Positions 7,853 to 52,555 of a stretch of DNA of 64,000 nucleotides are shown here, one piece after another (position 1 is the first letter of the stretch; the number at the start of each line of letters is the position of its first letter). Source of the DNA: Diplonema japonicum (Eukaryota; Protista; Euglenozoa: Diplonemea); assembly GCA_964019335.1 (NCBI GenBank), contig OZ025665.1:496001-560000 (forward strand), in the 5' to 3' direction. A program made the translations under genes and the position numbers. The notes beneath the pieces were generated by a model. It had not been told where the DNA came from. It was given only the letters and a program-made list of their open reading frames with translations, and did no database searches.

Positions 7853-8606
7853 CTAAGTGTTGCTGTTGGAGGGAAGAGCGATGGTCGTCTCTAATGTAAA
7901 GTGCGGCCGGTGTTTTCCCAAACAAACAGCTTCTGGGGCCGCTACAGCGGGTTAATGGGAACAAACCGCATTGCATGCATCCTTAGATGTGACATGAGGA
8001 GGGCAGAGTTGGAACAAGCTAATAATTCCCCAGAGGGGGAAAAAAAAAAAATATAGATACGTATTTAAAAAAAAAAAAAAAAAAAGGAAATGGAAAAGGA
8101 GCAAGAATTCGGGAATAAAAAAATAAAAAAATAAAAAAATAAATAAAAACTTATCGCACCGATGCTGCTCATGGTTCGCATCCATCGTGTCTTGTTGGCA
8201 GCCTCTAGGCACCACTCTATATGGAGCTTCATCTCTATTCGGTATGCCCGTTGTGCAGAGGTTCGTCCTCCGGCTTGTTAGCCCGCAACGCGTGTCCCAG
8301 TACCTCCGTGTAACTCCAGTACCGCTCCCCCACACGTCAAAGAAAAAAAAAAGGGGAAAAAAAAAAAAAGACAGAAGAGGCCCAAAAAGGGCTGATGATG
8401 GATCGTTAAAAAAAGGGGGGGGGGGTTGTGAAGGAAAACGGTAAGAAAACTTTTTCGATGAAGACTACGACAGCGCAGGGCGCGTTCCAGTTTCGAAGAA
8501 AAAAAAAAGGAAAAAAAAATCAGAATTTAAACCAATTTTAAACCAAAAAAGGTATTACAATAAGTAGGGGCCGCGTTTTTACAAAAGACCAGTCAGCGCC
8601 ACGTGG

Positions 8607-8624
8607 GTGGCATCATACCTTGCG
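8607..8624 (+). repeat. 18-bp direct repeat, left copy (candidate target-site duplication)
   Basis: gtggcatcataccttgcg is identical at 8607-8624 and 17336-17353, bracketing the retrotransposon. Confidence 0.5.
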
Positions 8625-9415
8625 GGAATGGTAGGTATTTAAGCGGGGAGGTGTCGCCATCTGAACGCCACCCCCCCCTCCCCTCCCCCTAAAAAAACAC
8701 CTCACACATGTGCCCGAAGAGACGATACTGGCTATTGCTAAAAACTTTCTTTTTTCCACTATACGCACGATTTAAAAAAAAAAAAAAAAAAAAAAAAAGA
8801 GAGAGAGAGGAAAGGGTAGGGGAAATTTAAAAAAATTCATATAAACTTTTTTTTTATTGACTTGTGCGGTACCCTTGACTTTGGTACCCCACTTCAATAT
8901 AGTTTTTAAAGAATTTTGTTTAATAAATATTTTTTTTAGTAATATTTCTTTTTCTTTTTTTTTTAAACTTTTTTTTTGAAAAAAAAGGTTACGGGTTGTA
9001 TATCGTTCAAATAAGCGACCTTTTATAGGTTGGTCTACACAGAGAGAGGAGAAATAGCTAAAGAGGGGGAAAAAGGGGGGGGGGGGGTGTCTTTTGACAA
9101 AGAAGGGAACCTGCAGTATGTGATAGGATCGCCTTTAAAAAAAAAGAAAAAGAACCAGAGTTTAAAGTTAGCCTTCTCATAAAAAAAAAAAAAAGATTAG
9201 CAGCAAATACCTGCCGTAAGGGGTGCAAGAATCGGGGGGACAGGCACTATCAGACTTTAACAAATTGAATATACAAAGTCCTTTTGCACACGGAGGGAGT
9301 TAAACCCCACCCCACCCACTCCCTCTTGCACATCTTACGTTTAATTCTTTCTTTAAAAAAAAACTCATAGTAAAAGACAATCCCACTCGAGGACAGCCTC
9401 TTGTGGTGTGAGTTC

Positions 9416-12400
9416 CTATCTATTAATGCTCCCCTTCTGGAGCATAGCCTTCGTTCCTATTGTCGCCTTTAAAGCTTTTCGTAGTCTCGACACGCGTTCT
9501 TTCTTGTATGTCCCTTTCAACTCCTGTAGCTTTTGCGCTGTCTGTCTTGCTGCGAAGATCGGTCTCCTGTTAAAGCCTATTGCAGCCTTGCCTCCGATCG
9601 CTGTGAGCGACTTGACCCTCTTTGCCCCGTCCGCAGGGAAGGGGCGTCTTATCCGTCTCGTTCTGCACACTGCGTTGGCTCTCTCCACCAACAGCTTGAT
9701 TCTGCGTGCCTTCCTCTGCATGTTGTAGACTCCCAGTGACTTTCCGGTTGTCTCCTCAAAGTCGAGTGCAAGTTCAGCTGCCGAAACCTCCGAGTCGGTG
9801 TCGCCCTCCACCCATCGCAGCTTTCCCATCCATTCCAGTAGTGGTTCCCCGAATTGCTCCAGCAGTCCCACCACTGTCCCCAGCTGTGCTGTCGTCGGTA
9901 CCGGGGTCACTTTGCCTGTCACTTCCCGCTCCCATGGTAGCTTCTTGTTGCCGCCTTCTGCCTGCATCAGCCCTTCGTCCCGCTTTTCCACCACCATTGC
10001 CAGGTATCGCTGCAGCTTCTCCAGGTGTTCGAACCCGTTCCCCCTTGGTAGGATGGCATGCAGCTCGAGGCAGAGCGGCCATCCCGTCCTGTCGCGCAGT
10101 GGTTCCATCTCCTCCCGTATCAGCTCCTCTCGTGCTGGCGGGCACTCGTACAGCTGGTGGCGTAGCAGTGTTACTGTGTCCGCATGCTTGGTCGGGCAGA
10201 GGTCACATTCAAATCCCGACTCGTCTTGTCCTTCATGCGCCGCTGGCTCGTCTTGATCTTCCTCTTCTTCGCTCCGTCCCTCGGACTCGTCGTCCTCCTT
10301 CGTGGGGGGTACACACTTTGGTCCTGCTCTGGCATACGGACTTAGGTAGGGGATCCCTCCCGCAATTACCCTCTTGATACAGAAAGCTAGATGGCGATCT
10401 TTAGCTGTCCTCCAGAGGTCATTCGTTTTGGGATCTGCTCCTTCCCCGAGTCCGCTGACCGTCTTCCGTTCCGTTGCTAGTGTCGCACTCCTGGCTGCCC
10501 TTACAGCCGCCCTGAAGGCGCTTCCTCGCTTGGGCCACTCAAGTTCTGTGGCTATTTCCATCTTCTCCCAGTCCCATCCGATTCTCGGCATCCACCTGCA
10601 TATCAGATTCCCCACCGGTCCCAGGGGGGTCCTCTGTGAGCCGTACCTCTGCACTATTTGTCGCACTCTCTGTCCAAGACCTGTCCTTTCCAGCGCGCTC
10701 GATATCACTTTTAGCGAGTGACAGATGACGTAGGACAACGGGTCATTGATGTGTCCTTTCAGCAAAACCGTATTCACCGCTGCAGGCGATCGTCCTCGGA
10801 AGTGAGGCCCCCATAGGTTGCAGGTCACTCTCGTTGTTAGCTTCTTCAGCGCCTCATCACTCGGAGGGGAGAACGGGCTGCTGTAGAGGCACGACGGCAA
10901 GACCGATGTTCCAATCAGGTATCCTTTTGTTTCGAAGGACAGGCTTGTCCCTCCCAGCCGGTCTAGCTTGTTGGCCGCTTCCGTCGCTGGCTCGTTCCAC
11001 GTCGTTCCTGTCCTGTTCGTGAACACCATCACGCCCAGTGCCTTGAACGACGTCACTGTTCTATAGGGGACTGCGACCTCTCTCCCTTTCTGTGTTACTG
11101 TCCTATCACCCAGCACTTTTGACCGGAAGCCCTTCTTCGTGCCAAACGCTACCGTTTTCTCCGGGTTAAGCTTCATCCCAGTGAGTCCGCAGAACTCCAA
11201 AGTTCCGTTTACCGCAGCCTGCAAGGTCTTCTCCAACTCTGCCAGAAGGTACGTGTCATCTGCATAGGACAGAACCTCCGTTCCAGGTGCTTCCTTCTCG
11301 ATTGTCCTGATCATCACCGCCAGTAAGGCGTTTATAATGATCACCGACAGCGGGCACCCCTGGAGTATCCCATTCGTTGCTTTAAAGGTGGCCCCTATTC
11401 CTATGGGGAACTTGAATCTCCTCGAGATTTGCCCGTACATTCCTTGGAGTGCTCGTGCGATTGCTGGGTCTAGTCCCAGGGCCAGCATCAGTTCGTGCGA
11501 CAATTGTTGCGGGACCAGGTCGAAGCACTTCCTGAAGTCCAATGCAAGTCCTTCTAGCGGCTCGTCCTCCACCAGTGCCAGTTCTAGCTTCGTGCATAAG
11601 TCAATCAGCGCCGAGGTCGTGCTGTGTTTAGGCCTGAAACCATGTTGTCGTGGTGTGATCCACCTCTCCTGCCATTTCAGTACCTGCACCAGTCGTGCAC
11701 TTGCCCACAGCCGGTAAATGGTACTGGTCACTGTGATCGGTCGGTGATCCAGAGGTGCCGTTCCTTCCCCCTTTGGGATGAGGGATACGAGTGCCGTCGT
11801 GACCTGCATCGGCCATTCGCCCGTCTCCTCTATCAAGTTGAAGAGGTCCGCAAACGCTTGTAGGATCGGAGCCGGCAGGCGCTTCAACTCACCAATCCGC
11901 CAGCCGTCCACGCCGCATGCCCCCTTGTCCGCTTTCTTACCGATCACCTCTTTCAGCAGCTTGGCGTCGATGGGGGCGTGTGCCATCGGGTTGCTCTTGA
12001 TGTGCTCACCGTACCGTCTCTGGAACTCGTCGAACTGCGGCTCGTCTTCTGGTGTTCGTGCGCAGAAGATGTCCGACCACGCCGTCCGCATCACTTTGTC
12101 CATCTTCTTCAGGTTGGCCGTCACTCCCCCGTCTGCTGCATCCACTGTTTGTGTCCCTTGCTTGGTGCTGTTATTCATCCAGGCCGTCACGTGCCTTCTC
12201 TCCTTCGCGAAGTTTGTGCGGATCGAACGTTCGTAGGCACGCGTTTGTGCTCTTTTCCTGCTCGTTATCAGGTCAGCAAGCTCTCCCTCGGTGAAGCATT
12301 CAGCCACTTCTAGGTCCTCCTGGATCACGTCTACGCTCTCTGCGTCGTCCACACGGCAGTGTTCTATCCCCAGCTCTCCTCCTAGCTTTGAGATGTTCCT

Positions 12401-13762
12401 CAACAAGTTACGGGTCTCTGTCGACATCACTCCGCAGCCTCCTTCCTCCTGCAGTCGCGATATCCTGTCTTGTCCTGCTCGTATCTTCTTCTTGAGCTTC
12501 TCGAGCCGTATCTGCCTGGTGGGGGCAGCCCCGACTGCCGTCCCCGTCGACCTCGCGCTTAGTTCCATGGGTATTGGCCTCCGCACGTTTCCCCTCCCTG
12601 TGTACGATCCTCGTGATGGTCCTTCGTACCCATGTAAGAGGTACGTCTCCGCCATGTTCGAGATTTCCGTCAGCGCTTCTGTCGGCTTCTTTGCTGCGAT
12701 GTACTCCTTGTATCTCGACTCCTGCACCAGGTTTGCCGCCACCGCGGCAGGCGCTCTCTTCGTCTTCGGGATCTCCTGCGGCACCACATATCTCAGGACT
12801 TCCTGGTGGAAGGCCGGGACGTTGAGGGTCACGGCCAAGCAGCGGTGATCTGAGCCCAGAATTGAGCCGTCCACCCTACAGTGTCTGAGGCCCTGCGCTG
12901 CCACCGCGTTCAACAAGATCCTGTCAATCCTTGTCCCACAGTTGGTCTTCACGAAGGTGTCCTCCAGTGGTGTCCCTTCCCGCCTCGCACAGAAGTCCGC
13001 GGCGTCAATCCAATCTGTCTGCAGGGCTTTCTTCAGTACTGGGGATCGGTGTTCATCGGTGTTGAAATCCCCCACCACCGCCACTGGCACGTTCCCAAGC
13101 TCAAACCTCAGGCGGTGCAGTATGTAGTTCAGGAGTTCCTCTCGCTTTCCCTTCTTGATGGGGTCCTGGCCGGAGTGGCAGTAGACGTTCACTATGTGGA
13201 ACCAGCGTTTGTCGGCGTCTAGCGACACCTTGACGTGCGTCCACCGATCTTTGTGCGGTCCGCTCGTTTCACATCGAACTGCTGTCCTCGGCTTCTTCAC
13301 CAGTGTTCCCAGCCCTCCTCGTTCTGCTATGGTCAGCGAGGTGACTCCCTTGGACTTCCTCCCCGGTTGCGGTTTGCTCCACAGCCTTTCGTACTGCTTC
13401 CCCCACTCGTCCTCTCTCAGTACTCGTTCTATTTCCAACTGCGTTTGCGCCGTGAGTGCCGTCTCCTGCATGCAGAACACATCCGGGAGGACACCCGCGT
13501 ACTCTCCGAGACGGTTGTTCAATGACGATCCATTATGTGTTAGGATCGTGAAGCTATTCCCCGCTGGCGGGCGGGGCACGATGGGTCCCGGGTTTGGCTC
13601 TATCCCATCCACGACCAGTCGCTCGAATTTCTTTTCGGCTAACCCTTTTGGGTCATATTTCGATGGTTCAAGTGATGTTGATGATGATGATGTTACTGAT
13701 GATATCGATTTTGATGATGATGAGGGGAGGGGATTGGCGCGTGAGTGGGGGTCATCGTTCAC
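9416..13762 (-). CDS. LINE ORF2: 2A-like peptide, APE endonuclease, reverse transcriptase and CCHC-type C-terminal motif
   Basis: APE motifs: THNGSSL, FCMQET, VNVY, VGDFN, TRIDRIL, SDH. RT motifs: GVDG, LIPK, RPIT, QHGF, LDFRKCFD, GILQGCPLS, YADD, LGV. C-terminal CDLC...H....C. The track start is GTG, not ATG. Confidence 0.95.
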   Translation of the reverse strand: MNDDPHSRANPLPSSSSKSISSVTSSSSTSLEPSKYDPKGLAEKKFERLVVDGIEPNPGPIVPRPPAGNSFTILTHNGSSLNNRLGEYAGVLPDVFCMQETALTAQTQLEIERVLREDEWGKQYERLWSKPQPGRKSKGVTSLTIAERGGLGTLVKKPRTAVRCETSGPHKDRWTHVKVSLDADKRWFHIVNVYCHSGQDPIKKGKREELLNYILHRLRFELGNVPVAVVGDFNTDEHRSPVLKKALQTDWIDAADFCARREGTPLEDTFVKTNCGTRIDRILLNAVAAQGLRHCRVDGSILGSDHRCLAVTLNVPAFHQEVLRYVVPQEIPKTKRAPAAVAANLVQESRYKEYIAAKKPTEALTEISNMAETYLLHGYEGPSRGSYTGRGNVRRPIPMELSARSTGTAVGAAPTRQIRLEKLKKKIRAGQDRISRLQEEGGCGVMSTETRNLLRNISKLGGELGIEHCRVDDAESVDVIQEDLEVAECFTEGELADLITSRKRAQTRAYERSIRTNFAKERRHVTAWMNNSTKQGTQTVDAADGGVTANLKKMDKVMRTAWSDIFCARTPEDEPQFDEFQRRYGEHIKSNPMAHAPIDAKLLKEVIGKKADKGACGVDGWRIGELKRLPAPILQAFADLFNLIEETGEWPMQVTTALVSLIPKGEGTAPLDHRPITVTSTIYRLWASARLVQVLKWQERWITPRQHGFRPKHSTTSALIDLCTKLELALVEDEPLEGLALDFRKCFDLVPQQLSHELMLALGLDPAIARALQGMYGQISRRFKFPIGIGATFKATNGILQGCPLSVIIINALLAVMIRTIEKEAPGTEVLSYADDTYLLAELEKTLQAAVNGTLEFCGLTGMKLNPEKTVAFGTKKGFRSKVLGDRTVTQKGREVAVPYRTVTSFKALGVMVFTNRTGTTWNEPATEAANKLDRLGGTSLSFETKGYLIGTSVLPSCLYSSPFSPPSDEALKKLTTRVTCNLWGPHFRGRSPAAVNTVLLKGHINDPLSYVICHSLKVISSALERTGLGQRVRQIVQRYGSQRTPLGPVGNLICRWMPRIGWDWEKMEIATELEWPKRGSAFRAAVRAARSATLATERKTVSGLGEGADPKTNDLWRTAKDRHLAFCIKRVIAGGIPYLSPYARAGPKCVPPTKEDDESEGRSEEEEDQDEPAAHEGQDESGFECDLCPTKHADTVTLLRHQLYECPPAREELIREEMEPLRDRTGWPLCLELHAILPRGNGFEHLEKLQRYLAMVVEKRDEGLMQAEGGNKKLPWEREVTGKVTPVPTTAQLGTVVGLLEQFGEPLLEWMGKLRWVEGDTDSEVSAAELALDFEETTGKSLGVYNMQRKARRIKLLVERANAVCRTRRIRRPFPADGAKRVKSLTAIGGKAAIGFNRRPIFAARQTAQKLQELKGTYKKERVSRLRKALKATIGTKAMLQKGSINR
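13583..13609 (-). other. 2A/StopGo-like ribosomal skipping motif DGIEPNPG|P
   Basis: Close to the D(V/I)ExNPGP consensus (G in place of D, with D one residue earlier). It lies about 11 residues before the first APE strand (FTILTHN). Confidence 0.7.
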
Positions 13763-13768
13763 TTCATG

Positions 13769-16051
13769 TCACTTCGCGCATGCTCGGCAAACACACACCA
13801 TACAATCCTGCTGGAGGCACTTTACACCTTGTCTCTTCTTCGTGAGGGCCTCCCCACAAACACTGCATCCCGCGTCCCAGTGATGGAACACATTGTTGAA
13901 AACGTGTGAGCTCCCGGTCGCCTTGCAGATTCTCCAATCGCAATCTTCGTCCTCGTCCTCTCCCTCTGGTTCTCGTTCCATTTCCTCGTCTTCTTCTGTT
14001 GGTGGGGGTCCCAAGTCGTCGTCATCGTCCGTAAAGTCAAAAGATTGTTCTTTTCCTTGGGCTATTTTCTGTGCGAAGGTCTGTCCAAGGGGGGCCGGCC
14101 CGCTCTTAACCTGCTTCATCAGTTCCCCGATCTGTTTGGACATCATGTCCATTTGCGTCCCCATTTTCTGGACTTCCCTCTCCAGTCGGGCGTTTTCCTG
14201 CCTTAGCCTCTCTACCTCCGCTGTAGGTTTGACCTCCGGTGTCGGTCCTCCCGCGATCTTTTTAAGGGCGCGCTCGATGGCGGTGAGCCTGTCTTCCACT
14301 GCAGAGGTTTGTTGTTTGTCCTCTGCTGTCTTTGTCTTCTGCGCTTTCTCAGTCGAGGCACCACCTGTGCTGGGGCGTGGTCCTGTCTGCTTTGAGTCCG
14401 ATTGCTTTCCGTGTCTGGCGGGGTCGCTTGTGCTGGGCCGTGGTCCCCCCTGTGTCGGGCCATTCTTGAGAGCGTTCAGGAACGACTTTCCCGGTGTTGC
14501 CGCCCTGCCCCACACCTGGGTTGTCCTCGGCTTACCGTTCGGTGGTGGTCCCTCATCCTGAGCAATCCTGCAATGCAGAACGTCCCCCTGCGGTCCCGTA
14601 ATACGGAGGGATGTCGTCGGCGGTTGCGGTCCTCGTATCAGCCAGCACTTCGTGTTGCCCGCCCAGCTGCCGCGCACTGGTACACCATTCCATCCTATGG
14701 CCCGCAGGATGTGTCGCACCTGCACTTCCCCCGCCTCACGGTAGAGCCCCGAGAGTCTCCACATCGGCTCCCCGTGTTGTCCGCTCTTCCTCGTCTCCTC
14801 TCCGAGTATTCGGCTAAGCAGCGGAATCTTCCCTTCTTCTGTGGTTCTGACACCTAGTCTCCCGTCGGACTCCCTCAGGGCCAGGCCGTGTCCCTCGCCG
14901 AAGCTCAGCGCCTGTTCCAGCGTGGTCTCTTTCGGCAGCCATGCAACTGGCTGCGGCTTGCCATCCCTTGGTTTGATGAAGACCCCTTTGCTTCCGGACC
15001 CCTTTACCATGTTGGCGAGCTCGACCTTCGGCAACGTCACCAGTGCGTCTACGTGGGGGTTCGGGCCGCTCGACACCTTGGACACTGCTATGATCGACTC
15101 GAACTTGAGGACTTCTGTCAGCCACTTCCTTGGCGACGTTGCCGCCGTCTCCCACAGTGAAGAAGGTACATATGCCTTCGGTATGATTACCGCTGCCCTG
15201 CTGTAGTGCTCCCCTAACTTTACGTCCCGTGTGTCCTCCCTTGTGACGCGTTCTATTTTTCCGGATAGTAATAGCACGAACATCCGTCTGTTGGAGTATG
15301 CCTTCCCATCTTGCAGAACGATGTCGTGCTTGTGTCTTCCTTCACCGTCCTTCTTCAGCAATAAGGCCTTGTTCCCCGTCCACTCCTGTCCTGCTGCCTC
15401 CTCCACGCACTTTTCACTGGCCATCGCTACCCCGTCCTTGCCCTCGAGTAACTCCTCCCACGTTACGAAAGGGACGTTGTACTGGTCGCTTTCTAGCTTC
15501 CACGCCCTTTCCTCCTTCTTCGTCATCCTTGCTTTTCGTTGTGGTTTGCCGACCACCGTCCACGCCTTCTTCTGTCCATCCGCTACGGGGACCCCTACTT
15601 TTGGGGGGGTGAAGTCCGTAGCTGTCACCCCTTTCAGTGCCGACGGTGTCCTCGGCTCGATGACGCCGTAGAAGGACTTCCCGTCGAAGGCGATGTGGAC
15701 CGGCTTCTGTCCCTTCTTCGGTTTCCCAGGCACCGGGTAGACGATGAAGGTGTCCCCTGAGAAGGTGGCGACGTTGATGTCCATCCGCGTGGCCCTAGCC
15801 ACTGCCAGCACACAGACCAGGTCTGCGCTCGTCCCGTCCTTCGAGTGGGCGACACAGTACTCGTCGTAGTCTGTGCCTTCCTCAAGGAGCTTCGTGTACT
15901 CCTTGTCGTTGCCCCGCAGCTCCTGCACCATGAGGCGCCGCACCTCATGTCCCTTCTTTCCCGTCTTCGACCCCGCCACCGCGTACAGCCCTCCGGCTCC
16001 TCCCTCCAGCCCCAGGCCGTACCCGCGTAACCCCGCTCGCAGTCTCTCCAT
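13769..16051 (-). CDS. LINE ORF1: degenerate OTU-like N-terminus, coiled coil, acidic linker and C-terminal Cys-rich zinc finger
   Basis: 760 aa, starting at the first AUG after the SL. OTU-like spacing: LYAVA...HEVRRLMVQEL...YDEYC...DGTSAD...LAVA...INV...VHIAFDGKSFY. Coiled coil EVERLRQENARLEREV. Finger CSVC...C...C..C.C..C. Confidence 0.85.
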   Translation of the reverse strand: MERLRAGLRGYGLGLEGGAGGLYAVAGSKTGKKGHEVRRLMVQELRGNDKEYTKLLEEGTDYDEYCVAHSKDGTSADLVCVLAVARATRMDINVATFSGDTFIVYPVPGKPKKGQKPVHIAFDGKSFYGVIEPRTPSALKGVTATDFTPPKVGVPVADGQKKAWTVVGKPQRKARMTKKEERAWKLESDQYNVPFVTWEELLEGKDGVAMASEKCVEEAAGQEWTGNKALLLKKDGEGRHKHDIVLQDGKAYSNRRMFVLLLSGKIERVTREDTRDVKLGEHYSRAAVIIPKAYVPSSLWETAATSPRKWLTEVLKFESIIAVSKVSSGPNPHVDALVTLPKVELANMVKGSGSKGVFIKPRDGKPQPVAWLPKETTLEQALSFGEGHGLALRESDGRLGVRTTEEGKIPLLSRILGEETRKSGQHGEPMWRLSGLYREAGEVQVRHILRAIGWNGVPVRGSWAGNTKCWLIRGPQPPTTSLRITGPQGDVLHCRIAQDEGPPPNGKPRTTQVWGRAATPGKSFLNALKNGPTQGGPRPSTSDPARHGKQSDSKQTGPRPSTGGASTEKAQKTKTAEDKQQTSAVEDRLTAIERALKKIAGGPTPEVKPTAEVERLRQENARLEREVQKMGTQMDMMSKQIGELMKQVKSGPAPLGQTFAQKIAQGKEQSFDFTDDDDDLGPPPTEEDEEMEREPEGEDEDEDCDWRICKATGSSHVFNNVFHHWDAGCSVCGEALTKKRQGVKCLQQDCMVCVCRACAK

Positions 16052-16232
16052 ACTGCTCGTCCTCTGCTCTGCTTCCTTTTTTTTTTTTTTTTTTTTTTAC
16101 TTCTTGTCAACTTCAATGTCTTCTTTTACCCTCTTTTAGCTCTCTTTTCTGCGATCTGCTTTCTCAACTTCTTTCAATTTTCTTTCTTTACAAACCGTAT
16201 TACCTATTGACTTTATTGGCACGATCGGACAC

Positions 16233-16270
16233 CAATAAAGTACAGAAACTGTAGCTTTAGAATCGTTGGT
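16233..16270 (-). other. Genomic copy of the euglenozoan (diplonemid-type) spliced-leader exon, 38 nt
   Basis: The minus strand reads ACCAACGATTCTAAAGCTACAGTTTCTGTACTTTATTG, followed by GT. The 3' half CAGTTTCTGTACTTTATTG is the conserved kinetoplastid/diplonemid SL. The 5' half matches the diplonemid AACCAACGATT start, as recalled, minus the first A. Confidence 0.9.
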
Positions 16271-16633
16271 GAAAAAAAGGGCTCTGGGAGAAGGGAAAGA
16301 AAAGAGAAGAGAAGAAAAAGGTCAGTTGTCCTTTCCCCCTCTCTTTTCATGAAGCAGATAGATAGATAAGAAAATCAAACCATTAAAAAAATATAAAGCC
16401 TTGGGGAAATACTTAAAAAAATGTAAGTAGTGTGCGTTTTTTTTTTTTTTTTTTTTTTTTTTTTCCCGCCTTCATTTCGTCCCACAGCTTTTTCGGTTGA
16501 TTAGGTGAGTGATAGTTAGAATAGTTGGATAAGTGTTTCTTTTGCTGCGGTAAGGGGGGAAATAATTAAAAGGACCGCTGTTTTTCTTTTTTTTTTTTGT
16601 GCTTTCCGTACCCCCCTTACCGCAAAAGTTTCG

Positions 16634-16668
<35 letters not shown>

Positions 16669-17335
16669 TTTCCGTTGAGAATGGGTGAAATTATTTGCTT
16701 TTTTTTTTTTTTTTTTTTTTTTTAAACTTAACTCCAGCAAAATTTTCGTGGGTGGGGGTGAAACTCACAATTCACTTTATGTCACCTGATTTTATTTTAT
16801 TTTCACACTCGGACTTCTTTAAAGAAAATTAGGCCCGGGAGTGAAAAAATTCTGATAGCGCTAAAAATAAGAGACTAATTTAAGCAAAACCCTCCTAAAA
16901 TACCTACCAAGGTTTCTTGGGGATGGGCAAGAACCCGACTGCACAAGAGGCGGACGCAGCAGGGTTCACCCCCTGCCAAGAGCCATACGAAAAGGAGTGG
17001 GCACGCTTTTTGTGTGTTTCATAATTATAGGAAGGGAAAAAAAAGGGCCTGTCCGAAAGAAGAGGATTTTATTCGCTATTTCAATGACATGAACAAGTAA
17101 GGCCTCAACTCGGTTGTGAAGAGGAATTACAACAAGCAGTTACAAGACTACCCCCGACTAAAGGTCCCCCTCAAGAGGTTCCAAGAAGGCAAGTCAACAC
17201 AAAAGGCGAACATCAGCAAATGATGGAATTATTTAGCACCAAGGTATGGGATCGTCCGCCTATGCAGCGTTGATGTTCGCAAGAGACACGCACACTGCCG
17301 AGGCACACGTCTTATCCTTGTCCAGCTCACTGCAA

Positions 17336-17353
17336 GTGGCATCATACCTTGCG
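17336..17353 (+). repeat. 18-bp direct repeat, right copy (candidate target-site duplication)
   Basis: Identical to 8607-8624. Confidence 0.5.
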
Positions 17354-17899
17354 ATTCTAATTTGTACCACCGCCACCTCCCACAAATTCTGCTGTCGTTA
17401 AATAAAATATTGTATTTGTGAATTTAAGATTGATGATTTCACTTGTGGTGTCATGCAGTTTTGACTCGTTAAATGTTATAACACTCGCTTCACTCGTCAA
17501 AACCACTGCCACCACGCGTGAAATCATAGGGTCTTATATTCCACTAAATAAATAGTTATCTTTTTTTTTTTTTTTTTTGTTTTCTGGAAAGTGAGAAACG
17601 TCGGACTGGCAAATTGTCCAGCGGCCTTCAAGACTATAGTCCAACAAATCCCCTCCCCGGACGCTGGAAGATCACTGAAATGACATTTCTTGTTTGCCAG
17701 CCCCGGCACTTTTATCTTCACTTGTGCTAGAAATATTAAAAAAAAGCAGTAACTTTCTTTTTTTCCTTCCACCCCCCTTTTCCGAGTAGTACTAGTCGGA
17801 AAGGGTGAAGGAGAAAAAAAAGAATTACTGTTGAATGAAAAAAAAAAGGGGGGGGAAAGGAGCAAAGAAATCACGCAACAAATGCATTTTGTTTTTTCT

Positions 17900-20800
17900 T
17901 CATATGCGTCCTTCCTGTACGTGTACGATTCGAGTGTACCGCCTTCTGCTCGGGGGAGTGAACCGTGAATGGCTCCCACTGAGGTTTGAATCATGTCCAC
18001 TGCCTTCTAACAAAGGTGTTACCACAGGGCTTCCCCGTCCAAAGGCACCTCTTCCAGGGAGTCTGAGAGTGCTACTGTTAAGTACTCTGTAAGGCTTTGT
18101 ATTGCTTAACACAGTACTCAATGCTAGTGGGTTTGGGTTTGCCTCGCTCGACGTGCTGTCTGTGACAAGATCCAACATGTCCAGGGCCACTTTGGGCGTC
18201 ATGTCGTTGCGCACACCGAAGCTACCCAAAGGTGTCTCACCTTCCCCTAACATTCCCCTCCTTGCTGCTACCAGTGCCGTTTTCCTCCTCCCCAGCCACA
18301 GGTCCAACAGGTACAGAAAGATGTCATAAACACCCTTCACCATCATCAGTAAGGCAGACACAAGCAGAAGTGTAGCTGCCGCATCCATCAGCGTCTTGCT
18401 GCCCCCTGCCCCAATCGCAATCGTCATGAACAGCACAGCAAAGAACATCGTCCCACTGATGCACGATGCGAAGATCTTATCCAGCAGTGAGTTGTGGGGG
18501 CGAAGAAGTATAACAGCCAAGAAGAACAGAAAGAGGACAATGCAGATGAAGATATTCCGTACACTGCAGGCACCGGCCTCATAAGGCTTCCAAACGGAGC
18601 ACAGGCTCAAGAGCACGATCTGCAGGATTTCCACAATGGAGAACCAATGGAAGCCCTCCCTGTACTGCTCGAAGAACAACCCGTACTGCTCCACAAAGAA
18701 GTCAGGCCCGCCCTCCTTCCGCACCCACACCTCCCTCCCGTACACAAGGATGTACACAGTCCGCCTCCACCCGGTGTACACAACACCCTCTTCTTCACCA
18801 CCTTCCGCAAAGGCGGTTTGTTCCCCAGAACGTTCCAGCTCCTTCACCCTGCATGCAGCGTGCTTGTCGATCTTCGGGTCGGGTATCGTTGTCCCTTGGA
18901 ACCGTCCAGGACGCAGGATCACCATCCACAAGAGTACTGGAAAGGCTGCACACACCCCGAGCATCACAACCCCGATGACAGCGTGTTGCTTCGGTGCCCT
19001 GTCAGGGAAGAAGGTAAGGTTCGCAGCAGCAATGCTTGTGCCCATGAGGAGCCACAACATGGGGATGCTGACAAGCCCAGGGGCCCGAACATAGAAGATG
19101 GCATCGTCGTACTTCAGTCCCAACATCACGAGGACCACAGCGAGGAGGTAGTTCAAAAGGAGGAAAGCAGCAATTAGCCCGATGTTGGAGACGATGGCCC
19201 CCAGGAAGTACCTCTGAGGGGACGACCCGATCCCGAAGCCCAGAGGGTGGTACTCCCAGTCCAAGGGCTCCGTACCCACGTCAATGTCCTCAACCTCACA
19301 GTCGAAACCCATCAACACAGCGAGCCTCGCCCCTCCAGCAGGGTTCGCCGCTGCAGTCTTCTTGCGAACATCCTTCTGACCCTGTGGCTCTATCAGCACT
19401 GTTCCCGGAGAAGACGTCTTCGGCACACTTGTCTTCGGTGGTTCTGTAGTAGGTGCTGCTGTTCGAACGCTCGTGGTCGGCCCTACAGTAGGTTCTCGCG
19501 AAGGGGAAGCAGTGGGCATCAAGGTAGAAGCATCAGTTGGTGGTGATGGTGTCGGGGCAGCAGTCAGTGGTGACACAGTAACAGGTGGATCAGTGGATGG
19601 TACCAATGTGGGTACAGCTGTTGGTGTTGAAGTCAGCGGTGCTCTAGTGGTGGGAGGGTCAGTCGCTGGTGCCGATGTGGGATCAGCCGTCGGGGTTGCT
19701 GTTGGCGGAGCTGCAGTGGCTGGTGCTAAGGTGGGTCCTGCAGTTTCTGGTGAGTTAGTAGGAGCTGCAGTTGCCGGTGCCGATGTGGGCTCGACCGTCG
19801 GAATTGCAGTCGGTGGCGCCAAGGTGGCAGGAGGGTCAGTCGCTGGTGTCGTTGTGGGGACAGCTGTTGGGGTTGCCGTTGGTGGGGCAGCAGTAGAGGG
19901 AGGGCTCGTTTCCGGTGTTGAGGTTGGGACGGAAGTGGGAGGTGCATCAGTTGCCGGTGCCGATGTTGGGATTGCTGTTGGAGGAGCCGCAGTGGCAGGA
20001 GGGTTGGTATCCGGTGCTGGGGTGGGGAAAGCAGTGGGTGGAGTATCACTTGCTGGTGCGGATGAAGGTTCGGATGTTGGGGTTGCTGTTGGTGGAGCAG
20101 CAGTCGCTGGGGGGTCAGTTGCTGGTGCCGATGTTGGGATTGCTTTTGGTGGAGAGGCAGTGGAGGGAGGGTTGGTATCTGGTGCTGAGGTGGGGACAGC
20201 AGTGGGTGGGGCCACAGTGAGAGGTGCATCAGTTGCTGGTGCCAAGGTGGGTTCGGCTGTAGGAGTCGCAGTGGAAGGAGGATTAGTTGCTGGTGCCGAT
20301 GTAGGGGAAGTAGTCGGTGGTGCTAAGGTGGCAGGAGCGTCAGTTGCTGGTGCCGATGTGGGGACAGCTGTTGGTGGTGCCGCAGTGGAGGGAGGATTTG
20401 TATCCGGTGCTGAGGTGGGGACAGCAGTGGGTGGGGCCACAGTGGGGGGTGCATCAGTTGCTGGCGCCGATGTTGGGGTTGCTGTTGGAGGGACTGCGGT
20501 GGAAGGAGGATTAGTTGCTGGTGCCGATGTAGGGGAGGCGGTCGATGGTGCCAAGGTAGCAGGAGCGTCAGTTGCTGGTGCCGATGTGGGGACAGCTGTT
20601 GGTGGTGCTGCAGTGGAGGGAGGATTTGTATCCGGTGCTGAGGTGGGGACAGCAGTGGGTGGGGCCACAGTGGGGGGTGCATCAGTTGCTGGTGCCGATG
20701 TGGGGACAGCCGTTGGTGGTGCTGCAGTGGAGGGAGGGTTCGTATCCGGTGCTGAGGTGGGTTCAGCTGTTGGAACAGCAGTGGGGACAGCTGTTGAGTC

Positions 20801-22531
20801 ACACCCTGTTTGAAGTTTCTGCATCTGCGCTGTGGTGAGAACCTTCCTCCAAATGGACAAGTCGTCCAGCATGACGTTGTTCGCAAGCTTCCCCCCAAGA
20901 GTGTCCGCCCCTGACAGCACCATCCCCCTCACAGGTGCCATGCTCGTCGTGAAGAAATCTTCAGGGAACCCATCAGATAACCCCACCTCGGTCCCCACTT
21001 CCTTCCCGTCCATGTACATCTTCATCTCCGTTGTTGTGTGTGTGAAGCAAAAGAAGTTCCACGTGTTCTCAGGGAAAGATGCCAGCTGGACCCCTCTGTA
21101 CAAGGCCCGCACCCCTGACCCGTGCCACAGGAGTTTTCCACTCACAAGTTCCACCCCATACCCGTAGCCTTCGTTCGCAGTGCTGGGAATATGGAAACCC
21201 ACACCGATCATAACGCCGTTCGCTTGGGGACCAGCGAAAGACGTACCTTTCCTCAAACGGGCACATATGGTCATCTCCCTTGTGGGGTAGTGCTCCCCTG
21301 ACCCGTAGCGATAGATCGAAGGGTACTGGATCTGCGCAGTGGTCCCACCCATGAACTCTACACAAGGGATCCTCCCTGTATCGCACTCACTGGTTCTAAT
21401 ATTCACGTTAGTGTTGATGTAGATAGGCTTGTTCGGGAGCATTCCATCGTTGTCTGTTTGGTAACCAATAGCAGAGGGTTCAAAGCCTGTGCTCCACACA
21501 AGGTCGCCCGCCGCCAGGGACAGGGCTGAGGTGCAGCTCCCGATAATAGTTTTGGAAGAGACCTTTGAACGCATACACACAACCTCATGCTTGTCGTTTT
21601 CCTCTCCTTCCCACCACCTCCCTGCAGGGAGCAAGGACGAGTATCGCCCCCTGTCGTGGTAGTTGTTGAGGGTGTTGCCCCAATGACTGCCTTCCTCGGG
21701 GAAACCGTCGCCAGCTGCCCACAGCCACGTTCGGTAACTGGTTGTCTTTGCGTTGGGAAGGATGCTGAGACCGGTGTGTACTCTGCTGAGAGTTACCGGT
21801 CCTAACAGTGACTTGACGGCGGCTGCCTGTGCGTCGCTCTTGATGGTGACAGGGTGTGCGTTGTAGGCATCGCAGATGTCATCTGCACACCTCCCGAGCA
21901 TCTGCTCGTTGAACAGCATCACCTCGCTGTCAGCGTCGAGCGATGACCAAGTGGCCGAGGAGAGAGGGCGCTCGCAGATGAAGGGCTTCGTCACATCAAA
22001 ATCTGCATATGTCCACTGCTGGGGAAAAGCTTTGTTGAGCATAACGCCCGTGTTGGAAGTTTTCCCGGAAGGGCTCGTAAAGAGGGTGAACGTCAAAGTG
22101 GGCACTTGCGCACAGGGGCAGGGGGTGGTCGTGCAAGATGACGTTGTTTTGCATTTCTGAGTGCCATCTATGGTGAAGTAGCCCAACCAGAACTCATCAT
22201 CCAGGATGGAGGTGAGCATCTCCTGCTCCTCCAGACTGGTGATGATCGCCAACGTGGCACCGTCGGAAACACAGAGCTTGTGAGCATCCCAATACTTCAT
22301 CTTCCCGGTGTGCACCTTGTACTCCTTGCCACCAACAGGCCAATACTTGCTGGATTGCGCAAGTCCTGCAACACACGGGCGACATGCCTTAGAAACCAAA
22401 GGATCTTCTATACACCCAGCTGCTGCACAGACAAGCGCATCCCCGACAACAGACCTGCACCGTGAAGCCATCCCCTCACAGTACCCTGCCAGCAGTAGTA
22501 TCGCCAACGTCCATGCCGTCCCATACGACAT
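17900..22531 (-). CDS. Surface protein paralog 1: signal peptide, two C-type lectin-like domains, LamG/pentraxin-like domain, Pro/Thr/Ala mucin stalk, about 7 TM helices
   Basis: Lectin: YWDAHKLC...LAIITSLEEQ...FWLG...FICE. LamG: WNFFCFTH...MYMDG...LDDLSIWRKVLTTAQM. Stalk of 19-aa repeats, then seven hydrophobic segments. Confidence 0.9.
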   Translation of the reverse strand: MSYGTAWTLAILLLAGYCEGMASRCRSVVGDALVCAAAGCIEDPLVSKACRPCVAGLAQSSKYWPVGGKEYKVHTGKMKYWDAHKLCVSDGATLAIITSLEEQEMLTSILDDEFWLGYFTIDGTQKCKTTSSCTTTPCPCAQVPTLTFTLFTSPSGKTSNTGVMLNKAFPQQWTYADFDVTKPFICERPLSSATWSSLDADSEVMLFNEQMLGRCADDICDAYNAHPVTIKSDAQAAAVKSLLGPVTLSRVHTGLSILPNAKTTSYRTWLWAAGDGFPEEGSHWGNTLNNYHDRGRYSSLLPAGRWWEGEENDKHEVVCMRSKVSSKTIIGSCTSALSLAAGDLVWSTGFEPSAIGYQTDNDGMLPNKPIYINTNVNIRTSECDTGRIPCVEFMGGTTAQIQYPSIYRYGSGEHYPTREMTICARLRKGTSFAGPQANGVMIGVGFHIPSTANEGYGYGVELVSGKLLWHGSGVRALYRGVQLASFPENTWNFFCFTHTTTEMKMYMDGKEVGTEVGLSDGFPEDFFTTSMAPVRGMVLSGADTLGGKLANNVMLDDLSIWRKVLTTAQMQKLQTGCDSTAVPTAVPTAEPTSAPDTNPPSTAAPPTAVPTSAPATDAPPTVAPPTAVPTSAPDTNPPSTAAPPTAVPTSAPATDAPATLAPSTASPTSAPATNPPSTAVPPTATPTSAPATDAPPTVAPPTAVPTSAPDTNPPSTAAPPTAVPTSAPATDAPATLAPPTTSPTSAPATNPPSTATPTAEPTLAPATDAPLTVAPPTAVPTSAPDTNPPSTASPPKAIPTSAPATDPPATAAPPTATPTSEPSSAPASDTPPTAFPTPAPDTNPPATAAPPTAIPTSAPATDAPPTSVPTSTPETSPPSTAAPPTATPTAVPTTTPATDPPATLAPPTAIPTVEPTSAPATAAPTNSPETAGPTLAPATAAPPTATPTADPTSAPATDPPTTRAPLTSTPTAVPTLVPSTDPPVTVSPLTAAPTPSPPTDASTLMPTASPSREPTVGPTTSVRTAAPTTEPPKTSVPKTSSPGTVLIEPQGQKDVRKKTAAANPAGGARLAVLMGFDCEVEDIDVGTEPLDWEYHPLGFGIGSSPQRYFLGAIVSNIGLIAAFLLLNYLLAVVLVMLGLKYDDAIFYVRAPGLVSIPMLWLLMGTSIAAANLTFFPDRAPKQHAVIGVVMLGVCAAFPVLLWMVILRPGRFQGTTIPDPKIDKHAACRVKELERSGEQTAFAEGGEEEGVVYTGWRRTVYILVYGREVWVRKEGGPDFFVEQYGLFFEQYREGFHWFSIVEILQIVLLSLCSVWKPYEAGACSVRNIFICIVLFLFFLAVILLRPHNSLLDKIFASCISGTMFFAVLFMTIAIGAGGSKTLMDAAATLLLVSALLMMVKGVYDIFLYLLDLWLGRRKTALVAARRGMLGEGETPLGSFGVRNDMTPKVALDMLDLVTDSTSSEANPNPLALSTVLSNTKPYRVLNSSTLRLPGRGAFGRGSPVVTPLLEGSGHDSNLSGSHSRFTPPSRRRYTRIVHVQEGRI
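19480..20795 (-). repeat. Coding minisatellite: 57-bp (19-aa) units with a 228-bp higher-order period
   Basis: APPTAVPTSAPATDAPPTV-type units. Near-identical blocks at 20343 and 20571 are 228 bp apart. Confidence 0.85.

Positions 22532-22533
<2 letters not shown>

Positions 22534-22594
<61 letters not shown>
22534..22594. repeat. (GT)n microsatellite, (CA)n on the sense strand, directly upstream of the paralog 1 ATG
   Basis: About 30 dinucleotide units ending ...CACACAG G ATG on the minus strand. Confidence 0.95.
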
Positions 22595-22596
<2 letters not shown>

Positions 22597-23831
22597 TGTG
22601 GTGTGGTGTGGCGTAAGGTGTATAAATGTATAAAAGAAAAAGAGTTAGACGAATTGGGAGATCGATAAAGTTTCAGTGTGCAGGGGGGAAGCAGCAACCA
22701 TGAAAAGCAGAAAAGAAAAGTGTGAAAATTAATTTTTCGGTGTGCGGGTGGGTGCTCACTGTAAAAAAAGAAGAAAAACATGTGTGCGTGTAGTAATTAG
22801 AAAAAGAGTTTAGCAAAAGAAAGGCTTTACGAGACACAAAAAAGGAGGGGGAGAGGGAGAGAGAGAAAGAGAGAGAGAGAGAGAGCGAGAGAGAAACAAA
22901 AAATAACATATATGATGTTAAAGGGGGTCTTTGTGAGACACCCCTTTGTTCTCACCCGCTACCTACATCCACTCCCTTTCAACAAGAAGAAGAAAGAGAA
23001 TAAAAAAATACATATAAAAGAGATAGAAAAGAGGCTAGTGTTTGTGGCGGCCCTGTTTAAAAAAAAAGGGGGGGGGGACGGGGAACAGATCATGAACCTG
23101 CCCTCAGAGGAACAAAGAAAAACGCCGTTTAACTGGGAGCAGAACCCCCGTGTTAAAACTTGAAAGAAAAGAGATTCGGCGGAAGAAAGGGACGAACGAG
23201 GTGACATTTTAAAATCCTGCAGCAGGTCATGAACCTGCCGCCTTCAGAGGCGAAAGAAGGCCATTAAAATGGAAGCAGGACCCCCTTTTAAAAAAAGCAA
23301 GAGGGGGAAAAAGAAAAAGAAAACAAAACAAAAAAGAAGCAGAAATGTGTCCGTTAAGAAAAAAAAAAGAGGGATGAGCAGAAACCTTCCCCCCTTCCTT
23401 TTTTTTTGTTCCCGACAAACCCGCTTCTTTCCTGTTGTTCCTCTTTTCTTATTCTATCCCCCCTCCCCCCTCCCCCTCCTCACTTCATTTGGTTTGCACA
23501 TTGTCACTCGTCACTTCATTACCAATTTCTTCCACTTCTCTTATTCTCAAAAAGAAAGAAGGAAGAAGAGATTAGATAAAGGAAGTTCCTGTTTTGGAAC
23601 GTCCCCCTGTCTCTATTTATCTTCCCCTTCTTTCTTTTTCGGCTGTGTTGCCCCTGTCTTGTTATCAAAAGAAAGAAGAAAGAAAAAAGAATTGACAGGG
23701 AGAAGAGGAAGGGAAGAAAAAAAATTTTTATTTTTATATAAGAGACAAAGGAGGCCAGTTAGTGGCGCTCTGCACAAGCTCTCCTTACAGGACACAAAAG
23801 AGAAAAAAAGAGAAAGAAACACAGTTTGTTT

Positions 23832-52474: not shown

Positions 52475-52555
52475 CTCACCTACGGTGTGTCTAATTTAAA
52501 AAGCAAAGAAACAAAATGTAGTAGTGAATACAGCTGTCTATATCTAACAAGTCTA

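What the first reader, a model, noticed from the sequence alone, without database searches (positions are those of the whole stretch)
9293..16270. Candidate new retrotransposon expression system: SL-headed LINE with anti-SL hairpin, in-frame UGA and 2A StopGo
Seen, 5' to 3' on the minus strand: a 38-nt SL exon; a hairpin closing over the SL 3' junction; 181 nt with no AUG; ORF1 (pseudo-OTU to zinc finger); a single in-frame TGA; a Ser-rich linker; DGIEPNPGP; an uninterrupted APE-RT. Known: SL-associated elements of kinetoplastids (SLACS/CZAR/CRE) use a restriction-like endonuclease and insert inside the SL exon, and L1Tc/ingi carry 2A-like peptides. I do not know of this combination in an APE element. 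Inference: one SL-capped mRNA makes abundant ORF1p. Occasional readthrough then yields ORF2p, freed by ribosomal skipping, which would solve both capping and stoichiometry in a trans-splicing genome.
Basis: partly seen in the sequence, partly recalled or inferred. Interest (0 to 1): 0.93.

Follow-up and report, generated by a model that had tools for sequence, protein, structure and literature searches.

The report
Spliced-leader-headed LINE with UGA and 2A
This is a young, intact retrotransposon of a diplonemid protist whose DNA copy starts with the host's spliced-leader sequence locked in a hairpin. Its two proteins are separated only by one in-frame UGA stop and a 2A "skip" peptide, a layout shared by sister families and not found in the papers searched.

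Summary
The described anatomy is real, apart from the 3' boundary. On the minus strand lie a 38-nt spliced leader (SL, 16270-16233) and a 9-bp hairpin over the SL 3' junction. Then come a 181-nt AUG-free leader, ORF1 (OTU fold, catalytic Cys replaced), one in-frame TGA (13771-13769), a 58-codon open linker, DGIEPNPGP and an intact APE-RT ORF.

The element ends at 9364 plus a T-run, not at 9293. It inserts into T-rich tracts, mostly in the sense orientation of neighbouring genes.

Most features are conserved:
- The TGA is present in all 7 family copies, and a diverged sister family has an in-frame TGA-C.
- The hairpin arms are kept in 30 of 30 modules sampled from five ORF1-defined families (one has a G-U change), and 48 exact modules occur genome-wide.
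- AUG-free leaders occur in all five families.
- 2A-like motifs precede the endonuclease in several diplonemid LINE ORF2 homologues, one annotated from Diplonema papillatum.

Only 2 of 8 copies of this family carry the whole SL. The other six start at its last 16 nt.

SL capping of the template RNA is well supported by genomic evidence. Readthrough and StopGo are inferred. It is not an ingi or SLACS member. I rate it a new variant of known kinds. Other first-stage notes report the same architecture elsewhere in this genome.

The parts
16272..16278 (-). T-run of the 5' flank (target tract), followed by one C before the SL
   Evidence: All sampled SL-hairpin element 5' ends are preceded by T-rich tracts.
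16233..16270 (-). 38-nt spliced-leader exon encoded in DNA at the element's 5' end
   Evidence: 214 exact copies of its 3' 23-mer in the genome. It is identical to the exon of the candidate SL RNA genes.
16211..16240 (-). Hairpin: 5' arm CTTTATTGG (last 8 nt of the SL plus G), 12-nt loop, 3' arm CCAATAAAG
   Evidence: Fold. The 3' arm is identical in 29 of 30 modules and carries a G-U change in one. The loop has three versions. There are 48 exact modules genome-wide.
16191..16198 (-). Second conserved block of the head (ACGGTTTG), separated from the hairpin by a stretch that differs between families
16052..16232 (-). 181-nt AUG-free leader. It contains an A-run at about 16097-16076 whose length varies between copies.
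13772..16051 (-). ORF1, 760 aa: N-terminal OTU fold (about 16051-15617), a weak coiled-coil-type region near aa 611-669, and a Cys/His-rich C-terminus (13942-13772)
   Evidence: (Pfam hits all below the curated cut-offs). Differences from a related species fall mainly on third codon positions.
13769..13771 (-). Single in-frame TGA, followed by C
   Evidence: The sister family has an in-frame TGA-C. It is unchanged in the RNA-like run X6.
13583..13768 (-). Open, Ser-rich linker (58 codons before NPGP) ending in the 2A-like ...ERLVVDGIEPNPG/P. It has no in-frame ATG.
12845..13489 (-). AP-type endonuclease domain (Pfam match range)
   Evidence: PF03372, 1.6e-10.
11033..11776 (-). Reverse transcriptase domain
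   Evidence: PF00078, 6e-24.
10142..10207 (-). CX2CX12HX4C motif in the ORF2 C-terminal region
   Evidence: read from the sequence; no Pfam hit.
9416..9418 (-). ORF2 stop codon TAG
9364..9415 (-). 3' UTR with a conserved stem-loop module (CCAC..GAGGCTGTCCTC..GTGG), ending in CTATGAG
   Evidence: The module recurs at 3' ends of other families.
9355..9363 (-). T-run at the 3' junction (target tract or 3' tail). Its length and purity vary between copies.

Best explanation
This is a recently active APE-type LINE of a diplonemid-specific clade.

Shown:
- It inserts into T-rich tracts, mostly in the same orientation as neighbouring genes.
- Its genomic 5' end is a reverse-transcribed host spliced leader followed by a conserved hairpin and an AUG-free leader.
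- ORF1 and ORF2 share one frame, separated by a conserved UGA-C, an open linker and a 2A-like motif.

Inferred mechanism:
1. The element is co-transcribed with host genes, and its RNA carries the SL cap.
2. Ribosomes scan the AUG-free leader and make ORF1p, which has a catalytically altered OTU fold.
3. A minority of ribosomes read through UGA-C.
4. The 2A peptide then releases ORF1p-linker and lets ORF2p (APE-RT) start at Pro (PIVPR...).
5. ORF2p nicks T/A tracts and primes on the U-rich 3' end next to a conserved 3' stem-loop.
6. Full-length cDNA copies the SL back into DNA.

The hairpin buries both the SL/GU junction, which is a former 5' splice site, and the first downstream AG. Its most likely role is to keep the head from being spliced away.
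For: Identity:
- Pfam finds APE and RT.
- Relatives are almost all diplonemid. They are 35-46% identical in Diplonema papillatum and 64% in D. japonicum transcripts.
- There are 40 or more 3' ends against about 8 5' ends, several of them 100% identical.

SL from RNA:
- 214 genomic SL copies are found.
- In a contig-end family the SL junction point varies.
- Seven loci have SL plus a 16-nt relict formed at the SL-internal ACAG. Two of them are followed by the hairpin.
- Candidate SL RNA genes have a different intron and a different upstream region.

Head:
- Hairpin arms are kept in 30 of 30 modules while adjacent bases differ by family.
- AUG-free leaders of 176-334 nt occur in five families, each with P(0) between 0.0004 and 0.027.

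Recoding:
- The TGA is kept in 7 of 7 copies.
- The sister family has TGA-C in frame, with an unalignable but open 59-codon linker.
- TGA ends other long ORFs in the window.
- The first in-frame Met of ORF2 lies inside the endonuclease and is Ile in the sister family.
- 2A-like motifs lie just before the APE in several homologues.

Target and orientation: (38 flanks in the same orientation against 8 opposite).

Expression:
- The body is covered in the RNA-like run X6, with the TGA unchanged.
- Differences from another species fall on third codon positions in 21 of the 30 listed.
Against: - No direct measurement of readthrough or StopGo exists.
- The 2A motif has Gly where the canonical Asp sits (DGIEPNPGP against D[V/I]ExNPGP).
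- No stimulatory RNA structure follows the TGA.
- Six of 8 copies of this family lack SL nt 1-22.
- How exactly one SL is regenerated each cycle is unexplained, because the SL/body junction (TTG|GT) is not an AG acceptor.
- Several SL junctions, both genomic and RNA-only, are not at AG.
- X6 is RNA only by inference, and its contigs cannot show 5' ends.
- The two families sharing the in-frame UGA are related, so they are not fully independent.
Confidence: 0.6

Rival explanations
1. ORF2 is made by termination-reinitiation at a near-cognate codon next to the ORF1 stop, not by readthrough. The candidates are GUG at 13762 here and CUG directly after UGA in the sister family. The 2A peptide then only trims a short leader peptide.
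For: - Near-cognate codons lie 0-2 codons after the stop in both families.
- An unchecked first-stage note reports an AUGA stop-start overlap, 63 codons before a 2A-like motif, in another family of this genome.
- SART1 uses UAAUG (PMC3894237).
- Several homologues have their own AUG plus a leader before the 2A.
Against: - Reinitiation does not need ORF1 and ORF2 to share a frame, yet both families keep it.
- Both stops are UGA-C, which from my own knowledge is the leakiest context.
- There is no AUG.
- Long upstream ORFs normally disfavour reinitiation (PMC3894237).
Confidence: 0.2
2. The SL-hairpin head is an SL RNA mimic and internal promoter, a functional analogue of Pr77 in trypanosomatid retroposons. 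Transcription would start at SL nt 1 and the RNA would be capped like SL RNA. No trans-splicing of the element would be needed.
For: - The head (SL, GT, stem, GGTTTG) is inherited as one block by five families.
- The candidate SL RNA also pairs TTTATTG with CAATAAA.
- Part of the loop aligns 16 of 20 with the SL RNA intron.
- Pr77 binds the SL-gene factors TBP and SNAP50 (PMC8190864).
- The junction TTG|GT cannot be remade by AG trans-splicing.
Against: - Similarity to the intron is not significant (p 0.06-0.6).
- SL plus relict plus hairpin copies show that re-trans-splicing into a resident SL does occur.
- The sense-orientation bias fits co-transcription.
- No Rfam family, ribozyme or otherwise, matches the head.
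Confidence: 0.2
3. The SL and hairpin are passive by-products. On this view they are a relict SL, as in dinoflagellate retrogenes, plus a chance complement, with no role in expression.
For: - Relict SLs are a known by-product of retroposition in trans-splicing organisms (PMC5585692, PMC6050394).
- Six of 8 copies of this family have a truncated SL.
- Some copies 100% identical at the ORF junction are of the truncated type.
Against: - The 3' arm is invariant, or changed to a G-U pair, across families whose neighbouring bases have diverged.
- All 30 modules sampled in five families keep the hairpin, and the leaders of all five stay AUG-free.
Confidence: 0.12
4. It is a site-specific insertion into an SL RNA gene, as with SLACS, CZAR and CRE, or the TGA is simply an inactivating mutation of this copy.
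For: The SL sequence abuts the element.
Against: - Upstream flanks are unrelated T-runs, not the SL gene upstream region.
- The endonuclease is APE, not restriction-like.
- Copies are dispersed.
- The TGA is kept in 7 of 7 copies and the sister family has an in-frame TGA too.
Confidence: 0.03

Closest known systems
L1Tc / ingi retroposons of trypanosomatids
   Same: Euglenozoan APE-RT LINEs. They have a 2A peptide ahead of the endonuclease and a conserved short 5' hallmark shared by several families (Pr77). See PMC1874656, PMC3708506, PMC8190864.
   Different: - Here a separate ORF1 precedes the 2A.
- No RNase H domain was detected.
- The 5' hallmark is the spliced leader plus a hairpin, whereas Pr77 gives unspliced transcripts.
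- Non-diplonemid relatives are very distant (E 1e-19 or weaker).
Relict spliced leaders of dinoflagellate retrogenes
   Same: The SL is copied into DNA at the 5' end of retrocopies. A resident SL is re-spliced at an SL-internal AG, leaving truncated relicts (PMC5585692, PMC6050394).
   Different: Here the carriers are the retrotransposons themselves. The SL is followed by a conserved complementary arm, and relicts do not pile up.
Gag-stop-Pol readthrough of gammaretroviruses (own knowledge)
   Same: An abundant structural protein and a rare enzyme come from one frame, split by one leaky stop.
   Different: - The stop is UGA-C with no detectable downstream structure.
- Separation would be by co-translational 2A skipping, not by a protease.
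SLACS / CZAR / CRE
   Same: Euglenozoan non-LTR elements physically associated with SL sequence.
   Different: - Those elements use a restriction-like endonuclease.
- They sit inside SL RNA genes, within the exon.
- This element has APE, sits in T-tracts all over the genome, and carries a whole or 3'-partial SL as its own 5' end.
SART1 (UAAUG) and other ORF1-ORF2 coupling in LINEs
   Same: ORF2 translation is coupled to the ORF1 stop (PMC3894237).
   Different: There is no AUG at the junction. The two ORFs are in frame, and a 2A-like motif lies downstream.

Membership tests
APE-type non-LTR retrotransposon (LINE) | AP endonuclease domain N-terminal to a reverse transcriptase in one ORF | tested here: met
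   PF03372 1.6e-10 (aa 94-308) and PF00078 6e-24 (aa 665-912). RT matches R2 and L1 ORF2p structures.
APE-type non-LTR retrotransposon (LINE) | Dispersed copies with frequent 5' truncation and a common 3' end | tested here: met
   40 or more 3' ends (358 candidates in the first look) against about 8 5' ends.
APE-type non-LTR retrotransposon (LINE) | Target-site duplications | tested here: inconclusive
   Both flanks are T-runs, so a duplication cannot be told from a split tract. No empty site was available.
ingi / L1Tc clade | Single ORF with APE-RT-RNase H (own knowledge and PMC3894237) | tested here: not met
   A separate 760-aa ORF1 is present, and Pfam finds no RNase H at E <= 0.1.
ingi / L1Tc clade | Pr77 hallmark at the 5' end | not tested
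   No Pr77 reference sequence was available to align. The first 90 nt here are SL plus hairpin.
ingi / L1Tc clade | RT groups with ingi in a phylogeny | not tested
   No reference set of LINE clades was available. Non-diplonemid hits are at E 1e-19 or weaker.
SLACS / CZAR / CRE | Restriction-like endonuclease and insertion inside the SL exon of SL RNA genes | tested here: not met
   The endonuclease is APE. The flanks are T-runs, not SL gene sequence.
2A / StopGo peptide | C-terminal D(V/I)ExNPGP motif | tested here: inconclusive
   NPGP, and I-E-P before it, are present. The canonical Asp position is Gly, with Asp one residue earlier (DGIEPNPGP). Relatives have GDVHPNPGP, GDVETNPGP, GDIETNPGP and EDGVEPNPGP.
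2A / StopGo peptide | Peptide-bond skipping during translation | not testable with these tools
   Needs a translation reporter assay.
Programmed stop-codon readthrough | Downstream ORF in frame, open from the stop and lacking its own start; leaky stop context conserved in relatives | tested here: met
   UGA-CAU here and UGA-CUG in the sister family, with open linkers and no in-frame AUG before the endonuclease.
Programmed stop-codon readthrough | Measured readthrough product | not testable with these tools
   No proteomic or ribosome-profiling data. No downstream RNA structure.
Relict-SL retroposition | SL encoded in DNA at the 5' end of retrocopies, with relicts truncated at an SL-internal AG | tested here: met
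OTU cysteine protease fold (ORF1 N-terminus) | OTU fold | tested here: met
   The AlphaFold model has pLDDT 75. Foldseek top hits are OTUD3, DUBA and OTUD1, with E 6e-6 to 1e-4 and TM 0.60-0.72. The Pfam OTU hit is below cut-off.
OTU cysteine protease fold (ORF1 N-terminus) | Catalytic Cys in the DGNC-type motif | tested here: not met
   At the motif position the families have G (window), S or T. The alignment to the OTU motif was made by eye, so this is an inference.

The most novel reading that the evidence does not exclude
The SL-hairpin head is a heritable cis-acting module, the diplonemid counterpart of Pr77. It would let a LINE obtain or renew an SL cap, by SL RNA mimicry or by guided SL replacement, while masking its splice signals. 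Combined with UGA readthrough followed by 2A release, it would form a two-step recoding system that sets the ORF1p:ORF2p ratio from a single SL-capped mRNA.
Probability: 0.3. Interest if true: 0.85.

Novelty: new variant of a known kind. Interest (0 to 1): 0.72.

Why it matters
Organisms that make mRNAs by polycistronic transcription and SL trans-splicing pose a special problem for retrotransposons. It is unclear how such an element gets a defined, capped 5' end and passes it on.

These diplonemid LINEs appear to carry the answer in their DNA. They have an SL head with a conserved masking hairpin, and they insert into T-rich tracts in the sense orientation of neighbouring genes.

The ORF1-UGA-linker-2A-ORF2 layout would be a natural case of two stacked recoding events in a cellular element. 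It runs against the reported rule that 2A-bearing LINEs mostly lack ORF1 (PMC3894237). All of this can be tested with reporters in a group of very abundant marine protists.

Tried and rejected
- **Rfam:** scans of 8000-18000 and of the 5' head gave no SL RNA, HDV-like or other ribozyme match. Rfam did not recognise the candidate SL RNA gene either.
- **Head versus SL RNA intron:** the local alignment is no better than shuffles, p 0.06-0.6.
- **RNA structure after the TGA:** none beyond shuffles in either family.
- **Expected product of trans-splicing just after the hairpin in this family (SL|...GTAATACGG):** 0 genomic matches. One such copy exists in another family (L040).
- **Metagenome scan for the SL-hairpin module:** 0 hits.
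- **Metagenome scan for the SL alone:** 120 contigs, mostly with the SL at one end. None encodes a relative of ORF1 or ORF2, and none has CAATAAA within 45 nt after the SL.
- **ORF1 protein search:** no homologue in the large protein collection. ORF1 has no BLAST match in the long D. papillatum ORF2-like proteins.
- **Tool limits:** Further families, including the 'element B' junction just outside L095, could therefore not be fetched.
- **RT phylogeny against ingi, L1, RTE, Tad and other clades:** not run, because no reference set was available.
- **Rules kept:** ORF1 and ORF2 were always searched as separate pieces.
Full report
**1. Observation**

- The 38-nt spliced leader (SL) lies at 16270-16233.
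- It is followed by GT and a hairpin whose 5' arm is the last 8 nt of the SL plus G. The 3' arm is CCAATAAAG at 16219-16211.
- The 181-nt leader has no ATG, against about 3.5 expected.
- ORF1 (760 aa) runs from 16051 to 13772.
- A single TGA at 13771-13769 is the only in-frame TGA across 6.6 kb.
- ORF2 continues in the same frame through a Ser-rich linker and ...VVDGIEPNPGP (NPGP at 13594-13583). It then runs through an endonuclease and a reverse transcriptase to TAG at 9418-9416.
- The first in-frame Met of ORF2 is residue 100, inside the endonuclease.

The one error is the 3' boundary. Forty or more other 3' ends define the end as ...CTATGAG at 9364, followed by a T-run.

**2. Organism and family**

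ORF2 has hits almost only in diplonemids. They are 35-46% identical in Diplonema papillatum and 64% identical in Diplonema japonicum transcripts. Non-diplonemid hits are at E 1e-19 or weaker. From memory, the SL resembles the published Diplonema SL.

The window is G000:C18:496001-560000 of a 62.5-Mb assembly. The family is young. Several copies are 100% identical over the ORF junction. There are about 8 5' ends against 40 or more 3' ends, as expected for a LINE.

**3. The SL head**

The genome holds 214 exact copies of the SL 3' 23-mer. It holds 48 exact SL-hairpin modules, of which 33 extend back at least to SL nt 17, upstream of the internal AG.

At least five families defined by different ORF1 proteins share the same head. 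The head consists of the SL, GT, a loop (three versions seen, two of them common), CCAATAAAG, a family-specific stretch, then ACGGTTTG. In 30 sampled modules the 3' arm is identical in 29 and carries an A-to-G change that keeps a G-U pair in one.

In this family only the window copy and one on C113 have the whole SL. Six copies start at TTTCTGTACTTTATTG, the last 16 nt of the SL.

Candidate SL RNA genes lie at about 9 loci, for example the tandem pair C15:779080/779432. Their upstream region is different. Their intron (GTACCCAATCTG...) is about 97 nt long and ends near a T-run. So the element is not sitting in an SL gene.

The SL RNA also pairs TTTATTG with CAATAAA. The overall similarity of the head to the intron is not significant, however.

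**4. How the SL gets into DNA**

A second family, found mostly near contig ends, carries the SL joined at many different points of the same body.

Seven loci have a full SL followed by the 16-nt relict. This is the product expected if a resident SL is trans-spliced again at its internal ACAG. Two of these loci continue into the hairpin. The same logic explains relict SLs in dinoflagellate retrogenes (PMC5585692, PMC6050394).

These data show that SL-bearing RNAs serve as reverse-transcription templates. Three things remain unexplained:
- How exactly one SL is restored each cycle, since the TTG|GT junction is not an AG acceptor.
- Why truncation at SL nt 23 is so common.
- Why several SL junctions are not at AG.

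**5. Target and context**

All sampled 5' flanks of the SL-hairpin elements end in T-runs. All 3' ends are followed by T-rich tracts of variable length and purity.

The longest ORFs in the flanks point the same way as the element in 38 cases and the opposite way in 8. In the window, most long ORFs are on the minus strand, like the element.

I infer that the endonuclease targets T/A tracts. Many such tracts would be the polypyrimidine tracts of co-directional gene arrays. This would place the element where it is co-transcribed, with a polypyrimidine tract just upstream.

A conserved 3' stem-loop (CCAC..GAGGCUGUCCUC..GUGG) recurs in other families. It probably marks the RNA for the reverse transcriptase.

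**6. Leader and ORF1**

In all five families the first ATG after the SL, 176-334 nt downstream, opens ORF1 in nearly all sampled copies; two of about 30 copies differ (L004, L015). The chance of zero ATG per family is 0.0004-0.027. This argues for scanning from the 5' end.

The ORF1 N-terminus folds as an OTU domain. The model has pLDDT 75, and the top Foldseek hits are OTUD3, DUBA and OTUD1 with TM 0.60-0.72. At the position I align by eye with the catalytic Cys, the families have G, S or T, while a His is invariant. 'Pseudo-OTU' is therefore reasonable.

The C-terminus is Cys/His-rich and has no Pfam match. ORF1 has no detectable homologue in the protein collection. A related species carries a 91% identical ORF1. 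Of the 30 differences listed, 21 fall on third codon positions, which points to purifying selection.

**7. The ORF junction**

The TGA is present in all 7 copies that cover it. One is a 96% copy in which a -2 and a -1 indel shift ORF1 onto the next TGA and restore the frame.

A diverged sister family has a different ORF1 C-terminus (...CRSCMEGGW). It also has TGA followed by C, in frame. Its linker is an unalignable but open 59 codons before NPGP, and the motif reads EDGVEPNPGP. The other two frames are full of stops. The Met inside the endonuclease is Ile there.

TGA ends several other long ORFs in the window, so it is an ordinary stop codon here. No RNA structure beyond shuffles follows the stop.

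2A-like motifs (GDVHPNPGP, GDVETNPGP, GDIETNPGP) lie just before the endonuclease in several diplonemid homologues. Some of these have their own AUG and a leader peptide.

2A peptides in APE LINEs are already known. They were reported to correlate with the absence of ORF1 (PMC3708506, PMC3894237), so this layout is unusual.

I rate readthrough followed by 2A release as the best reading. Reinitiation at the nearby GUG or CUG is the main rival.

**8. Reads**

One call on 13400-16400 used contigs from four runs.
- Run X2 behaves as DNA. It has 72 contigs on the stretch, and its SL junctions lead into the SL RNA gene.
- Run X6, from the same sample, has 1111 contigs, nearly all at the SL. I take it to be RNA, which is an inference.
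- The element body is covered in X6, and no change at the TGA is listed there.
- X6, but not X2, shows the SL joined to 13997, 15157 and 15535 inside ORF1, at non-AG sites. I cannot explain these junctions.
- Contigs cannot show true 5' ends.

**9. Comparison and novelty**

The element is not an ingi/L1Tc member. It has a separate ORF1, and no RNase H was detected. It is not SLACS-like either, because it uses APE and its flanks are T-tracts.

It works like a blend of known things:
- relict-SL retroposition;
- a shared 5' hallmark, as with Pr77;
- a leaky stop, as in gag-pol;
- a LINE 2A peptide.

Five literature searches found no description of SL-headed LINEs or of this junction in diplonemids (papers read). 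Other first-stage notes report the same architecture at other places in this genome. They are unchecked and do not count as independent evidence.

**10. Limits**

- No RT phylogeny could be built.
- ORF1 and ORF2 were searched apart.

Noticed in passing
G000 contig ends, e.g. L031 (C3:991500-994300), L032/L033 (C24), L041-L049: A second SL-headed family (gtcgttcgtgttctgctgg..., with an ORF starting ATGGATCCAAGACG) clusters near contig ends, with its 3' end pointing outward. On C24 it repeats every ~10.6 kb. Its SL junction point varies, and often no AG precedes it in the longer variants.
   Followed up: partly
L097 (C15:776500-780223), and C59, C51, C4, C30, C107, C2: Candidate SL RNA genes: the SL exon plus a ~97-nt intron (GTACCCAATCTG...) with a T-run close downstream. 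The assembly has only about 9 loci, as singles or pairs (352-bp spacing on C15), not a long tandem array.
   Followed up: partly
window 13997, 15157, 15535 (minus strand), run X6 only: Contigs of the RNA-like run join the SL 3' end directly to positions inside ORF1 that are not preceded by AG. The DNA-like run of the same sample lacks these joints.
   Followed up: partly
window 17745-17832: A near-perfect inverted repeat of about 80 nt, T-rich and A-rich with a G/C core. It gives weak microRNA-precursor-like Rfam hits on both strands (E 0.008-0.2). It lies between the element and the next upstream long ORF.
   Followed up: no
window 19380-20810 (+) and 49656-50885 (+): Two long plus-strand ORFs begin with the same peptide (PCGSISTVPGEDVFGTLVFGG). 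Each lies antisense within a long minus-strand ORF (17903-22672 and 48230-52495). This suggests a duplicated large gene.
   Followed up: no
window 16076-16097: An A-run inside the 5' leader varies in length between copies. This accounts for leader lengths of 176-199 nt.
   Followed up: partly
L074/L075 (C56), L073 (C95), L078 (C76): 3' ends of a different family carry the same 3' stem-loop module. They lie tens of bases downstream of this family's 3' end, in the same T-tract. This suggests repeated hits on the same tracts.
   Followed up: no
L056 (C31:517363-520969): A 96% copy has a -2 and a -1 indel flanking the stop. Together they move ORF1 onto the next TGA and restore the ORF2 frame. The copy is otherwise decayed, so this may be chance.
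   Followed up: partly
5' junctions in L009-L029: The base or bases between the T-run and ACCAACG vary within families (none, C, CC, T, or loss of the first A). If the SL is 39 nt (AACCAACG...), its first base is often missing or miscopied. This may reflect the modified cap-proximal nucleotide.
   Followed up: no
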